From Octopus sinensis (taxonomy: Eukaryota): DNA of 64,000 nucleotides. The position numbers and the translations under genes were made by a program. Shown here piece after piece: positions 19,702-35,658 of this stretch. The notes beneath the pieces are model-generated. The model searched no databases and was not told where the DNA came from. It saw nothing but the letters and a program-made list of their open reading frames with translations. The stretch spans positions 124,001-188,000 of the forward strand of contig NW_021832230.1 of NCBI RefSeq assembly GCF_006345805.1, read 5' to 3'. Position 1 is the first letter of the stretch. Each line of letters opens with the position of its first letter.

Positions 19702-22700
19702 ATGGGAGACAGCGGAGTATCGGACGAAATTTCACCCCCGTTAATTAACATTAATGATAGAGGAAGAAGTAAAAGAGTTGAAAATTTCACATTTATTATT
19801 TCTAGCCATTCAGAAGTATAACTTCAATTGATGGGCAGAAGGAAATTCTACGAAATTTTAAACAGATTAAAGAAGAAAGAAAAGCAACAGTCATAAAATT
19901 TAATTTTAATGTTGTAGCTTGATGAAAGACATAAATATATATTTAATCAGCTTGCTTTTTGTAGTGGGCTTGATATTAATACAGTTGAAGACAATTTGCT
20001 GACGGACTCAGAGGTTATTCTTAAAAAATAAAAAAAATAGTTTGAAGTATTTAACGACTTTTTTTCGAAAAATGGGTCACAAAAAATTAGTTTTCTTCAC
20101 AATGAATTGACTGAGAAAGGGAAACCTCAGCTAAAAATATTCAGAGATAGCATTGATGTAAAAATATAACAATATATGAAAATTTCTAGACTATAGAGGG
20201 GTTTTGCTACGTTTTTATCAAAGAAAAGAAAGATAAAGAAATAACAAACAATAACATCGCTCAAGAAGTTATTTTTTCTATGTTTGAAGCCAACCCCGAT
20301 AATTTTTTGGAAAGTGTAACGAGACTAATTAGTGACTTGTATATACCAGTAGTACAATGCAATGAAGTATTTTTATTCATGAAGCCTATTTTCAGGAGTG
20401 GAAAAAGAATTCTTCGATGGAAAAAATTGGAAATGAGTTAGTGGAAAATCTGCAAGATTTTGTGAAAAATATATCCTCAATTGGAAAAGAGTCTGTAAAT
20501 AAACAAATTCTTTATTTTGACAAAGTAAACGAGTCATTATCGCAATATACTATTCCAAAACAATATGAAAGTGCAGGTTTTAAATAACAAAACTGATTGA
20601 CTATAGCTTCTAAAAGTGATTTGGTTGAAATGCTGGAAAAGGAAGTTTCAACGTGGATGAAAAATATTGAAGAAACATTAGCAGAAAGTGAACAAATGCG
20701 GCGTGAAGCTGATGATGTCGGACCTACCGCGGAACTAAGCTATTGGAAAGAAAGAATGGCAAAATTTAGCGGGTATGAACAAGTCAAATTATTAAAATAG
20801 ACTCCTTGAACAGATCTCATCGTTTGAATGTACGCGAGCTTTATTAATCTTGAAACTTGCTAAATCAAAATTAATACCATTGTGGCTCAAATTAGTATTT
20901 TTTATAATTTATAACAAATTAGGATAACAAAATAACAATATCGTCAAACGAGGCCAAGAGCAACGTTAAGTTCTTGTATACCTTAGAAAAATATTTTGGA
21001 CCTCTTGGAAAATCGAATCCAGTACATTAAAAAAATTAACTACGACTTAGGTGGAACTGCTAGAAATTGTTCCCGGAGTCATAAATTCTGTGAAAATGAT
21101 TTATTCGGTGTCACAATATTATAATACTCCTGAAAGAATTACTTCTTTGTTCGTAAAAATAACGAATCAAATGATTGCATCTTGTAAAGTTTATATAAGA
21201 AGTAAAAGTTTAAAAATATGGGAACAACCTAAGTACTATCAAACTATTTCAATTATAAAGGGATGAACTGATTACCAAAATCAATGAATGTATCAAACTA
21301 AAAGATTTTTATCAAGGTTATTATCAAAAAACCAAAGAAAGATTAAAGATTGACCCAAGTGAGAAACAATTTGAATTCAGGTTTTAAGTGTTGTCATAGT
21401 TTCAGTGAAAACTATATATTTGGAAAATTTGAAACATTTAGTAAACGTCTCACAATGATTGTGGAGATAATTGAGGCAATCGATGCTTATTCTACTGTCA
21501 ACACTATTAAAGCTGACGGATTTGATCCGATCGCAATTAAATTTAAAACTATAACTGATGCAATCTACAAAAAGTCATACGATATTTTAGATCAGAGGAA
21601 AAATGAAGTAAAGACTGATTATTCTTAATGAAAATAGTTTAACGTGGATTATTCTGAATTTAAAAACAACATTAATCACATTAAGTTACAAATTGAAAAT
21701 TTTTTGAGTGGATGGATTTCTCGCCCACTTTCGGTTAGAATTAAACATATCAATATTGATTATAGGTCGAAAATTCTTTAGCGCTTATAAACAAATTTTC
21801 TTCTTTAAATGAATTAAATCTTGAAAGTCTCTATGCGGACATATTTTCAAATTTTGGAAAAGAATTAGAAGTTGTTAGAAGAATTTATGAAAAAAATTGC
21901 CGAGACCCTCCGGTTTTAAGATTTCATCCTCCAACGGTCAGTCGTATACTGTGGGCAAGGCAGCTGTTTAAAAAAATTGAATCGCCAATGAACGTGTTTA
22001 CTGAAATTCCTAGATTTTTGGAAGTTAATAATAAATTGTATAAAGCATAGAATCCTGAGTATCGCGAAACTATTATTAATTACAACAAAACTGCATCAAC
22101 TTTGCTTGAGTATGAGGTTTCCCAGCATTTAAATAGTCTTTGTAGATTCAAAGCTTTAACAGATGGCATATCAATGTCGCCAAAGTCAAACATAATCTTT
22201 ATTCTACTCTGTTAGTTGTAGATGAAACAAATTACGAATACTCAGTAAACTTTAATTATCGGATTCTTGAATTGCTTCACGAAGGAAGTTATATGGTTGA
22301 TATTGGATTGGAAATTCCTAAAGAAATTGAAACTGTCTGCGCAAGAAAAATTCAAATAAAGAACAAATTATCAAAGTCATTCAGTTAAATAACTATTATA
22401 GACTTCAAGATATGCTCAATGCGTATAATAACGTGACAAGCTCAATTCCACAGCTTTTAATTCCTCCAATGAGACCATTTGTCGAAAAAATTAGATTAGC
22501 GATGAATGATGGCGTGCGTTCTTTAAACTGGCAATCTCTCAACATTGATTCATGTAAATCACCGAATTTACTACGTTTAGATATAAATCAAGTAATGAGC
22601 ATGATTAAGGATTTGCAACAATTGATAAAAGATGCAAAAGATATTCTAATTTATAGAATTGAAAAATCATTTGAAGAAATAGGAATGACTCAGTTATTTG

Positions 22701-34700: not shown

Positions 34701-35658
34701 TATTGTAAGCATTCAACCTAAGGATGCTGGAGGCACTGGGGGAGAAACAAGAGAAAGTGCTGTTTACAGAATGGCTGATGACATGCTTAGTAAATTGCCA
34801 CAAAATTATATTGACTATGAGGTTAGAAAATTGAAATTTAATTTTTTAGATCAGAGATGCATTGCGGAAAATGGGACATTTACAACCTCTAAATATATTT
34901 CTTCGCCAAGAAGTTGACAGAATAAAAAAAGTCATCGGACTAGTATACATCACTCTGAACGACCTCAAACTTGCAATTGATGGAACAATTATAATGAGCG
35001 AAAACCTTCGAGATGCCCTCGATAATCTCTACGATGCACGGGTTCCGGCAATATGGGCAAAAGTAAAATAGTTATTATTTAACGAAATTAAGATTTCTTG
35101 GGAGTCGACTAGTATTGGATTTTGGTTTACAAACCTTTTGGAACGAAATGCACAGATCAATGCATGGCTATTTGGAGGCAGGCCCAAAACATTCTGGATG
35201 ACAGGATTTTTTAATCCTCAAGTGGATTTAATTTTTACTCAAAATAGGGCTTCTTAACTGCAATGAGACAAGAGATTACAAGAGCTCATAAAGGATGGGC
35301 ATTGGACAATGTCTCATTGGCAAACGAAATACTTAAATATTCCAAAGAAGAAATTACCAAATCCCCCGAGGAAGGTGTGTATGTCTACGGTTTATATTTG
35401 GATGGAGCCGAATGGGACAAAAAGAATTCCAGATTAATTGAACCTCAACCTAAAGTTTTAAACACAATGTTACCCGTTGTGCACATATTTGCTACTAATT
35501 CGGAAAGACAATCTGGAAAAACATTATACGAATGTCCTGTTTACAAGAAACCTCGTCGTACTGATTTGAATTATATCTTTGCACTATTACTAAAAACACG
35601 CAAAGAACCAGAACATTGGATTCTTAGAGGCGTTGCAGTGCTATGCGACACGAAATAA
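19702..35658 (+). CDS. DNAH5: Axonemal outer-arm dynein heavy chain, DNAH5/DNAH8 (gamma-type); 81 exons, 4553 aa
   Basis: Manual splicing of 80 introns (2295 nt) leaves an open 13662-nt CDS ending LCDTK*. P-loops [24 protein letters not shown] (DNAH5/8-type) and GVGGSGKQ; [10 protein letters not shown]; N-terminal LDERHKYIF; C-terminal [29 protein letters not shown]5 versus DNAH8 cannot be resolved here. Confidence 0.95.

What the first reader, a model, noticed from the sequence alone, without database searches (positions are those of the whole stretch)
19702..35658. Miniaturised splicing regime: 80 introns of 25-34 nt in one intact 4553-aa dynein gene
Seen: a by-hand parse gives 80 introns, none outside 25-34 nt (mean about 28.7). 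Many lack a polypyrimidine tract, e.g. 20014-20040 GTTATTCTTAAAAAATAAAAAAAATAG. Established: human DNAH5 has 79 exons over several hundred kb, and typical animal minimal introns are about 45-70 nt. Inference: this lineage kept a vertebrate-like intron number but shrank every intron below the usual size limit, so introns are probably defined by length and AT content rather than U2AF-type signals, implying an altered spliceosome. Dicyemids and orthonectids are known short-intron animals, so the phenomenon may be known once the species is identified.
Basis: partly seen in the sequence, partly recalled or inferred. Interest (0 to 1): 0.8.

Follow-up and report, generated by a model that had tools for sequence, protein, structure and literature searches.

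The report
Ultra-short introns in an animal dynein gene
An intact axonemal dynein heavy-chain gene of a fast-evolving spiralian animal, most likely a dicyemid parasite, carries 80 introns of only 25-34 bases, nearly all at positions shared with other animals. Introns of this kind have been described in dicyemids since 2007.

Summary
Window 19702-35658 (+) encodes an intact DNAH5/8-type outer-arm dynein heavy chain of 4554 aa, 64.6% identical to oyster DNAH5, read with the standard genetic code. My homology-corrected model has 80 introns, all 25-34 nt (mean 28.65): 77 GT-AG and 3 GC-AG.

I mapped the exon structures of five orthologues: Lingula, oyster, Capitella, sea urchin and Trichoplax. Of the 80 introns, 78 lie at exactly the same codon and phase as an orthologue intron; chance gives about 0.65. 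So these are real, ancestral spliceosomal introns that shrank without being lost.

Splice signals are reduced to (A/G)|GT(A/T)...(T/A/C)AG|G. There is no G at +5, no polypyrimidine tract above background and no branch motif. Neighbouring genes (SPTLC1, YTH) have introns of the same size.

The protein falls among Spiralia on a very long branch and is not close to Intoshia. Published work reports such introns in animals only in myxobolids and dicyemids, so a dicyemid is the likely source. I could not name the species directly.

The phenomenon is already published (Aruga 2007; Ogino 2010; Zverkov 2019; Lu 2019; Hadjez 2026).

The parts
19702..35658 (+). DNAH5/8-type outer-arm axonemal dynein heavy chain gene: 81 exons (48-411 nt), 80 introns, 4554 aa. 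Introns (start-end): 19816-19841; 19890-19917; 20014-20040; 20158-20189; 20367-20395; 20577-20606; 20773-20800; 20895-20922; 21022-21050; 21233-21260; 21381-21405; 21608-21637; 21734-21765; 22024-22050; 22117-22145; 22376-22401; 22554-22580; 22789-22814; 23009-23040; 23292-23317; 23522-23554; 23636-23667; 23881-23906; 24099-24132; 24252-24280; 24581-24607; 24849-24879; 25007-25033; 25107-25132; 25287-25311; 25579-25606; 25736-25767; 25906-25933; 26159-26184; 26358-26387; 26567-26595; 26784-26812; 27008-27033; 27169-27199; 27308-27332; 27633-27663; 27908-27934; 28048-28074; 28240-28269; 28390-28415; 28557-28584; 28696-28721; 28845-28871; 29115-29139; 29293-29322; 29464-29491; 29586-29618; 29765-29792; 29948-29981; 30136-30165; 30331-30358; 30548-30578; 30736-30763; 30970-31001; 31105-31132; 31321-31354; 31523-31550; 31689-31717; 31976-32000; 32193-32224; 32381-32405; 32589-32615; 32860-32888; 33195-33222; 33363-33391; 33560-33590; 33727-33758; 33899-33929; 34095-34120; 34316-34341; 34493-34526; 34639-34664; 34822-34849; 35063-35092; 35222-35247
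   Evidence: Gene models. Best match among solved structures is human DNAH5 at 5923 bits. 64.6% identity to oyster DNAH5 over 4530 residues, with no unexplained indels at junctions. P-loops: GPAGTGKT at residue 1915, GPSGSGKT at 2197 and GVGGSGKQ at 2886; GEQGTAKT is read directly from the printed protein.
22554..22580 (+). 27-nt phase-1 intron whose length is a multiple of three and which has no in-frame stop. The statistical parses missed it.
   Evidence: Reading through gives a 9-aa insert absent from all orthologues. Lingula, oyster and Trichoplax each have a phase-1 intron exactly here. Removing GTAAAT...TTTAG restores ...NIDSYINQ....
28048..28074 (+). GC-AG intron (GAG|GCATTC...TTTTAG), 27 nt
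   Evidence: Position shared with Lingula and Lytechinus. The upstream candidate 28007-28033 is rejected because reading through it restores 14 residues aligned to the orthologues.
26567..26595 (+). GC-AG intron (AAG|GCATTA...), 29 nt
   Evidence: Position shared with Lingula, oyster and Lytechinus.
31321..31354 (+). GC-AG intron (AAG|GCATAC...), 34 nt
   Evidence: No GT-AG path crosses this point. Position shared with Lingula, oyster and Capitella.
30331..30358 (+). 28-nt intron, corrected from a 19-nt call
   Evidence: The 19-nt version leaves a 3-aa insert (VIE) absent from the orthologues. The corrected version is used from then on.
23881..23906 (+). 26-nt intron at a position seen in none of the five orthologues, so either lineage-specific or lost in all five
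   Evidence: Its length is not a multiple of three, so retaining it would shift the frame.
19816..19841 (+). First intron (26 nt). Its placement is uncertain (alternative 19777-19805) and the N-terminus here is poorly conserved.
48312..50064 (-). Neighbouring gene, a serine palmitoyltransferase 1 (SPTLC1) orthologue. Predicted introns of 25, 26, 27, 28 and 28 nt, plus a probable further 27-nt in-frame intron that my model reads through.
   Evidence: Alignment to human SPTLC1 (E = 1.5e-77) shows a 9-aa insert in my model.
36081..37206 (-). Neighbouring gene encoding a YTH-domain protein, with predicted introns of 23, 25, 28 and 32 nt
   Evidence: (PF04146, E = 3.8e-40). This model was not checked against homologues.

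Best explanation
These are ordinary U2-type spliceosomal introns (GT-AG, a few GC-AG) of an animal gene, inherited from the bilaterian ancestor at their original positions. Each has been shrunk to near the physical minimum of about 25-34 nt in a lineage with a compacted, AT-rich, fast-evolving genome, most probably a dicyemid (Dicyema-like) parasite of cephalopods.

Shown here:
- The gene is intact.
- The introns are 25-34 nt.
- 78 of 80 sit at orthologous positions.
- Splice-site information is reduced to GT(A/T)...AG plus weak exon context.
- The introns are much more AT-rich than the exons.
- Neighbouring genes show introns of the same size.

Inferred:
- Introns are recognised across the intron (intron definition) from the paired ends at a constrained distance, helped by AT-rich content.
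- A branch A sits at a roughly fixed distance from the 5' end.
- Mis-splicing is policed by frame disruption and nonsense-mediated decay.
- Exons are purged of intron-like decoys.

This is the published dicyemid pattern of highly shortened introns in a conservative exon/intron structure, not a new regime.
For: - Gene and code. Identity of the protein.
- Intron positions: 72 of 75 Lingula, 59 of 63 Capitella, 55 of 60 oyster, 66 of 81 Lytechinus and 25 of 44 Trichoplax introns are shared with the window. In total 78 of 80 window introns are shared, against 0.65 expected by chance.
- Phase distribution is 56/13/11 (phases 0/1/2), against 52/12/11 in Lingula.
- Signals: G at +5 in 15% of introns against 48-83% in orthologous introns. 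Information at 5' splice-site positions +3..+6 is 0.22 bits against 1.3-2.8 bits. Pyrimidines upstream of the AG are 54% against 63-73%.
- Intron GC is 21% and exon GC 35%.
- Discrimination of true introns from exonic decoys reaches AUC 0.988.
- 78 of 80 introns would shift the frame or introduce a stop if retained. Only 18 of 80 have a length that is a multiple of three (one-sided binomial p = 0.024), and 16 of those 18 carry an in-frame stop.
- Exons hold fewer intron-like GT..AG stretches than synonymous-codon shuffles: 248 against 325 +/- 15.
- Neighbouring genes have 23-34-nt introns.
- Lineage: the protein lies inside Spiralia with the longest branch. It is 38% identical to the Intoshia linei fragment, whose introns are 35-1526 nt.
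- Literature: Dicyema acuticephalum introns average 26.2 +/- 1.9 nt at conserved positions (PMC2222250). Dicyema sp. has a median of 27 nt, I. linei a median of 57 nt (PMC6543705). D. japonicum has 36.7% GC and 49% repeats (PMC6736024). Among 51 animal genomes, only myxobolids and D. japonicum have introns under 30 nt, with signals reduced to GTa...AG (PMC13644364).
Against: - No transcript data were available, so junctions rest on reading-frame logic and orthology.
- The species was not identified by direct sequence identity. No near-identical protein was found in the 5.8-billion-protein set, an exact-DNA scan of the prokaryote genome collection found nothing, and the window has no rRNA or tRNA.
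- The mean length here (28.65 nt) is a little above published dicyemid values (26-27 nt).
- The signals for depletion of multiple-of-three introns, for a branch A and for decoy avoidance are weak or not fully controlled: n = 80, and codon-pair bias was not modelled.
- Single-gene trees place the sequence next to a rotifer, or in an unresolved polytomy. This is a typical long-branch effect.
Confidence: 0.85

Rival explanations
1. One reading: the spliceosome itself is altered. For example U2AF2, SF1 or U1 pairing might be lost or remodelled, so that introns are measured by a molecular ruler and AT content rather than read through canonical signals.
For: Positions +3..+6 of the 5' splice site carry almost no information. 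There is no polypyrimidine tract and no branch motif above shuffled expectation. AT content and length explain most of the discrimination. The length window is narrow, 25-34 nt.
Against: In myxobolids with equally short, signal-poor introns, U2 snRNA and U2AF1/U2AF2 are reported to be conserved, and Stentor with 15-16-nt introns is reported to have a functional canonical spliceosome (PMC13644364). GT-AG and GC-AG ends and the exon context (A/G)|GT...AG|G are canonical.
Confidence: 0.2
2. The window comes from an animal lineage other than Dicyemida. That would be a third independent origin of introns under 30 nt in animals.
For: No identical or near-identical protein was found. Mean intron length is slightly above published dicyemid values. 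Single-gene placement within Spiralia is unresolved.
Against: A survey of 51 animal genomes found such introns only in myxobolids and D. japonicum (PMC13644364). The combination seen here fits dicyemids: a very long spiralian branch, an AT-rich and repeat-rich genome with reverse-transcriptase fragments, cilia genes, reduced GTa...AG signals and conserved intron positions (PMC2222250, PMC6543705, PMC6736024).
Confidence: 0.08
3. The window comes from a ciliate (Paramecium-like) or a myxozoan, the other well-known carriers of 20-30-nt introns.
For: Both have similar intron lengths and AT-rich genomes.
Against: The exons read with the standard code, and no in-frame TAA or TAG needs reassigning. 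The protein scores 5923 bits against human DNAH5, against 3165 for Tetrahymena and 3800 for Chlamydomonas. It nests among spiralian orthologues, not cnidarian ones. 78 of 80 intron positions are shared with bilaterian genes. From general knowledge, myxozoans lack cilia and so would not need an outer-arm dynein. The window also holds an Otx-type homeobox gene.
Confidence: 0.01
4. The short AT-rich inserts are not spliceosomal introns. They might be segments eliminated at the DNA level, or artefacts of a degenerate pseudogene.
For: No transcript evidence is available here.
Against: All 80 inserts have GT/GC...AG ends. 78 of 80 sit at exact orthologous intron positions and phases. The spliced product is a full-length dynein with no stops, intact P-loops and 64.6% identity to oyster DNAH5.
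Confidence: 0.01

Closest known systems
Dicyemid ultra-short introns in a conservative exon/intron structure (Aruga et al. 2007, PMC2222250; Ogino et al. 2010, Gene 449:70, title only, as cited in PMC6543705; Zverkov et al. 2019, PMC6543705; Lu et al. 2019, PMC6736024; Hadjez et al. 2026, PMC13644364)
   Same: A narrow length distribution in the mid to high 20s. GT(a)...AG signals with no polypyrimidine tract. Positions identical to those in other animals. Fast-evolving proteins. An AT-rich, repeat-rich genome of a ciliated spiralian.
   Different: Mean length in this gene is 28.65 nt, against 26.2 nt (D. acuticephalum, 16 introns) and a median of 27 nt (Dicyema sp.). The species was not confirmed here. 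This single gene supplies 80 such introns, with a measured positional retention of 76 of 81 ancestral sites.
Myxobolid myxozoan ultra-short introns (Henneguya, Thelohanellus, Myxobolus; PMC13644364)
   Same: Median 22-27 nt, splice signals reduced to GTa...AG, weak A residues upstream of the AG, and a parasitic reduced genome.
   Different: Myxobolids are cnidarians. The window's protein groups with Spiralia, and the gene is an axonemal dynein.
Paramecium and other ciliate tiny introns (20-35 nt)
   Same: Similar length range. Depletion of introns whose length is a multiple of three and which lack a stop, consistent with surveillance by translation and nonsense-mediated decay.
   Different: Ciliates of this kind read TAA and TAG as glutamine, whereas the standard code applies here. 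The window's intron positions are animal ones.
Orthonectid (Intoshia linei) short introns
   Same: A reduced spiralian parasite with short introns. 8 of the 14 introns in its DNAH5 fragment lie at positions shared with the window.
   Different: The median is 57 nt genome-wide (PMC6543705). In the DNAH5 fragment the introns are 35-1526 nt, and the protein is only 38% identical to the window's.

Membership tests
Dicyemid-type ultra-short spliceosomal introns | Narrow length distribution centred on about 26-29 nt, with most introns at or below 30 nt | tested here: met
   80 introns of 25-34 nt, median 28, 60 of 80 at or below 30 nt. Neighbouring genes have predicted introns of 23-34 nt alongside some longer predicted ones of 50-120 nt that were not checked.
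Dicyemid-type ultra-short spliceosomal introns | Splice signals reduced to GTa...AG, with no polypyrimidine tract | tested here: met
   position +3 is A or T, G at +5 in 15%, 0.22 bits over +3..+6, and 54% pyrimidine upstream of the AG.
Dicyemid-type ultra-short spliceosomal introns | Intron positions conserved with other animals (conservative exon/intron structure) | tested here: met
   78 of 80 positions shared with five orthologues, against a chance expectation of 0.65.
Dicyemid-type ultra-short spliceosomal introns | The source organism is a dicyemid | tested here: inconclusive
   The protein is spiralian with the longest branch. It is not Intoshia-like. The assignment rests on exclusion and on the literature.
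Dicyemid-type ultra-short spliceosomal introns | Junctions confirmed by transcripts | not testable with these tools
   No RNA-seq or cDNA resource for this organism was available.
DNAH5/DNAH8-type outer-arm axonemal dynein heavy chain | Full-length architecture (tail, linker, six AAA modules with P-loops in AAA1-4, stalk, C-terminal domain) and closest similarity to DNAH5/8 orthologues | tested here: met
   Human DNAH5 scores 5923 bits, ahead of other dynein classes at 2431 bits or less. Named DNAH5 orthologues top the homologue search. 64.6% identity over 4530 residues. P-loops confirmed.
Ciliate tiny introns | Ciliate nuclear code (TAA/TAG read as Gln in Paramecium-type ciliates) and ciliate affinity of the proteins | tested here: not met
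   The standard code suffices. Tetrahymena dynein scores far below animal DNAH5.
Myxobolid ultra-short introns | Cnidarian (myxozoan) affinity of the genes | tested here: not met
   The protein sits in the spiralian clade, not with Nematostella or Pocillopora.
U12-type (minor) introns | AT-AC or GT-AG ends with a /RTATCCTT 5' splice site and a TCCTTAAC branch site | tested here: not met
   The 5' positions +3..+8 carry almost no information and no enriched branch motif is present.

The most novel reading that the evidence does not exclude
The lineage's spliceosome may have lost or remodelled polypyrimidine-tract, branch-point and U1 +4..+6 recognition. Introns would then be recognised by end-to-end distance (25-34 nt) plus AT content, while exons are actively purged of intron-like decoys. 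Alternatively, the window may come from a non-dicyemid animal, which would be a third independent origin of introns under 30 nt.
Probability: 0.2. Interest if true: 0.6.

Novelty: already known. Interest (0 to 1): 0.3.

Why it matters
The gene is a vivid single-locus illustration of a known oddity. An animal kept essentially every ancestral intron of an 80-intron gene while cutting each one to about 28 nt, below the roughly 50-nt floor of most animals, and stripping out nearly all classical splice signals.

This separates intron loss from intron shrinkage. It also poses a mechanistic question that is still open for dicyemids: how does a spliceosome find 80 correct GT...AG pairs among about 370 candidates of the right length?

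The paired comparison with orthologous introns and the hint of decoy avoidance in exons are small additions. The phenomenon itself is published.

Tried and rejected
- **Ciliate code:** table 6 brings no benefit over the standard code.
- **GT-AG-only parse:** it stalls at 31364, so a GC-AG intron is needed there.
- **Fewest-introns parse:** it gives 75 introns, some of 18-58 nt, and reads through real introns. Orthologue alignment rejects it.
- **19-nt intron at 30340:** replaced by a 28-nt intron.
- **Micro-exon parse at 28007-28074:** rejected.
- **RNA genes:** Rfam and tRNA scans of the window found nothing.
- **Homologue searches:** the first, over the full protein length, timed out. Two later searches found no near-identical protein.
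- **Exact look-up of an intronless transposase ORF:** not on record.
- **Exact-DNA scan of the prokaryote genome collection:** no hit.
- **Orthologue loci:** the coral protein was not on record, and the amphioxus gene was too long to fetch.
- **Ogino 2010:** not held in the paper library.
- **Branch-point motif search:** nothing above shuffled expectation except slightly more TAAC (15 against 8.5) and weak A enrichment at +17..+20.
- an empty script.
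Full report
**1. What is there**

The window is AT-rich (about 23-50% GC in 2-kb steps, mostly 30-35%). From 19702 to 35658 the + strand carries a long series of short open frames under the standard code. Reading TAA and TAG as glutamine does not lengthen them in any useful way.

A shortest-path parse using GT-AG introns alone stalls at 31364, where only a GC-AG intron restores the frame. 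A Viterbi model trained on the locus (codon usage, splice-site matrices, intron composition, a broad length prior) gives 80 introns.

**2. Correcting the model with orthologues**

The spliced protein's best match among solved structures is human DNAH5 (5923 bits). A DNAH8-length chain follows, then Chlamydomonas gamma (3800) and Tetrahymena outer-arm chains (about 3165). All other dynein classes score 2431 or less. A search of 5.8 billion proteins returns named DNAH5 orthologues, with spiralians (oyster, gastropods, nemerteans, Capitella, Lingula) on top. No near-identical entry appears.

Alignment to eight orthologues shows 58-65% identity over about 4500 residues (64.6% to oyster). Only three junction-related anomalies remain:
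- A 3-aa insert next to a 19-nt intron. The fix is the 28-nt intron 30331-30358.
- A 9-aa deletion around a 14-nt micro-exon. Reading through 28007-28033 and splicing only the GC-AG intron 28048-28074 restores 14 aligned residues.
- A 9-aa insert. This is a 27-nt in-frame, stop-free intron at 22554-22580, at a spot where Lingula, oyster and Trichoplax all have a phase-1 intron.

The final model has 80 introns (77 GT-AG, 3 GC-AG) of 25-34 nt, mean 28.65 and median 28. It has 81 exons of 48-411 nt and encodes 4554 aa, with P-loops intact in AAA1-4. The first intron is the least certain, because the N-terminus is poorly conserved; there I kept 19816-19841 from the trained parse rather than 19777-19805 from the generic finder.

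**3. Independent validation: intron positions**

I fetched the genomic loci of five full-length orthologues and one fragment, and mapped their exon structures exactly from the annotated proteins.

| Orthologue | Introns | Median length (nt) | Shared with the window |
|---|---|---|---|
| Lingula | 75 | 243 | 72 |
| Oyster | 60 | 312 | 55 |
| Capitella | 63 | 55 (minimum 49) | 59 |
| Lytechinus | 81 | 600 | 66 |
| Trichoplax | 44 | 104 | 25 |
| Intoshia linei (888-aa fragment) | 14 | range 35-1526 | 8 |

In a joint protein alignment, 78 of the 80 window introns fall in the same column and phase as an orthologue intron. Random placement gives a mean of 0.65 and a maximum of 5 in 5000 trials.

Of the 81 positions present in at least two orthologues, the window keeps 76. 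That is more than any comparator: Lingula 74, Lytechinus 69, Capitella 59, oyster 58, Trichoplax 28.

The unusual phase distribution (56/13/11 for phases 0/1/2) mirrors Lingula's (52/12/11). All three GC-AG introns sit at shared positions. Two introns (19816-19841 and 23881-23906) are seen only in the window.

This settles that the inserts are real spliceosomal introns of ancestral origin that shrank without being lost.

**4. Signals**

Relative to intron background, information is confined to the following:
- exon positions -3..-1, (C/A)A(G/A);
- GT, then A or T at +3;
- a weak T at -5 and -3 with no G at -3, then AG, then G at +1 of the next exon.

No branch-like motif exceeds composition-shuffled expectation.

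A paired comparison with the orthologous introns of the same gene shows the loss:

| Measure | Window | Orthologues |
|---|---|---|
| G at +5 | 15% | 48-83% |
| Information over +3..+6 | 0.22 bits | 1.3-2.8 bits |
| Matches to CAG\|GTAAGT (of 9) | 4.95 | 6.1-6.8 |
| Pyrimidines upstream of the AG | 54% | 63-73% |

Intron GC is 21% and exon GC 35%.

The 16-kb pre-mRNA holds only 374 GT...AG pairs spaced 25-34 nt apart, and 76 of them are the real GT-AG introns found in the model used. AT content alone separates true introns from exonic decoys with AUC 0.946, splice-site context alone with 0.936, and both together with 0.988.

The spliced mRNA holds fewer intron-like stretches than synonymous-codon shuffles: 248 against 325 +/- 15. 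For high-scoring stretches the figures are 5 against 13.3 +/- 3.4, and 0 of 200 shuffles were as low. This suggests purging of decoys, but codon-pair bias was not modelled.

A residues are weakly enriched at +17..+20 from the 5' end in all length classes. This is compatible with, but much weaker than, the pattern reported by Hadjez et al.

78 of 80 introns would shift the frame or bring in a stop if retained. Only 18 of 80 have lengths that are multiples of three (p = 0.024), and 16 of those 18 carry in-frame stops. This fits surveillance by translation, as proposed for Paramecium. That comparison is my inference from general knowledge.

**5. Not a peculiarity of one gene**

The window also holds:
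- an SPTLC1 orthologue at 48312-50064 (-). Its predicted introns are 25-28 nt, plus one unchecked 83-nt prediction. The alignment to human SPTLC1 also exposes a further probable 27-nt in-frame intron;
- a YTH-domain gene at 36081-37206 (-), with predicted introns of 23, 25, 28 and 32 nt, plus unchecked predictions of 50 and 101 nt;
- an Otx-type homeobox gene at 301-1277 (-);
- an ETS-domain fragment, and hAT and Tc1/mariner transposase remnants.

Those models were not refined against homologues.

**6. Whose genome**

- In a 38-taxon tree the protein sits inside the spiralian clade (support 100). It has the longest terminal branch of its paralogue group and joins a rotifer, probably through long-branch attraction.
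- With a site-heterogeneous model on the tail region it falls in an unresolved lophotrochozoan polytomy with Intoshia and a tapeworm. It again has the longest branch, 2.23.
- It is only 38% identical to the Intoshia linei fragment, no closer than to molluscs.
- The literature reports introns under 30 nt in animals only for myxobolid myxozoans and dicyemids (PMC13644364). Dicyema acuticephalum introns average 26.2 +/- 1.9 nt at conserved positions, in highly divergent genes (PMC2222250). Dicyema sp. has a median of 27 nt, against 57 nt in I. linei (PMC6543705). D. japonicum has a 36.7% GC, 49% repeat genome with LINE reverse transcriptases, and ciliated epidermal cells (PMC6736024).
- The window's composition, its reverse-transcriptase fragments and satellites and its outer-arm dynein all fit a dicyemid.
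- A myxozoan is excluded by the spiralian affinity. A ciliate is excluded by the genetic code, the protein affinity and the intron positions.

I could not name the species.

**7. Verdict**

[quoted passage not shown] 2010).

I rate that at about 0.85-0.9.

The inference of an altered spliceosome is neither supported nor refuted here. The nearest published test, in myxozoans, found canonical U2 and U2AF. What this analysis adds is modest: a complete 80-intron catalogue, a measured 76 of 81 retention of ancestral positions, a paired demonstration of signal loss, and a hint of decoy avoidance in exons.

Noticed in passing
window 7909-9856; 53992-57780; 59912-61170: A composite repeat module recurs three times: a 94-96-nt satellite array, a 102-nt repeat and a 118-120-nt repeat. 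The copy at 59.9-61.2 kb is inverted. The copy at 54-57.8 kb encloses the hAT-transposase-like gene. It looks like a large hAT-family element with subterminal tandem repeats, plus deleted copies.
   Followed up: partly
window 55362-57197 (-): A hAT-type transposase (BED zinc finger plus hAT dimerisation domain, both weak Pfam hits) is predicted as two adjacent genes with 28-30-nt introns. It could be a transposon-derived gene carrying host-style tiny introns, or an artefact of my gene finder.
   Followed up: no
window 40013-40540 (+) and 45747-46352 (+); GC-rich blocks at 4-6, 10-14, 40-42 and 46-48 kb: There are reverse-transcriptase (RVT_1) fragments in blocks of 42-50% GC, well above the roughly 33% of the surrounding DNA. 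Long ORFs at 4791-5873 (-) and 10653-12536 (-), in other GC-rich blocks, have no Pfam match.
   Followed up: partly
window 58466-59656: A 1.2-kb T-rich low-complexity tract (TTTTTTTA-like units, GC 23%, AT skew -0.42) is flanked by 15- and 30-nt microsatellites in inverted orientation (58012-58074 and 59682-59879).
   Followed up: no
window 301-1277 (-): An Otx-type, K50 paired-like homeobox gene (homeodomain [20 protein letters not shown]...[11 protein letters not shown]) with a 28-nt intron. It marks the DNA as animal.
   Followed up: partly
window 26567, 28048, 31321: Three of the 80 introns (3.8%) are GC-AG, all with the same context (A/G)AG|GCAT. The orthologous genes have 0-1 GC-AG introns among 44-81.
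   Followed up: partly
window 19702-35658 (spliced CDS): The exons contain about 24% fewer GT...AG pairs spaced 25-34 nt apart than synonymous-codon shuffles, and fewer high-scoring decoys (5 against 13.3). This may reflect selection against cryptic tiny introns. Codon-pair bias was not controlled.
   Followed up: partly
loci L001 and L005, and window 19702-35658: About 70% of introns in this dynein gene are phase 0 in the window, in Lingula and in the sea urchin alike. That is well above the usual animal average, so it is an old property of the gene rather than of this lineage.
   Followed up: partly
protein tree: Proteins named DNAH5 fall into two old bilaterian paralogue groups. A cat 'DNAH5' groups with second copies from molluscs and nemerteans, while chicken, frog and shark 'DNAH5' group with the window's clade. 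Database names in this family are therefore not reliable orthology labels.
   Followed up: no
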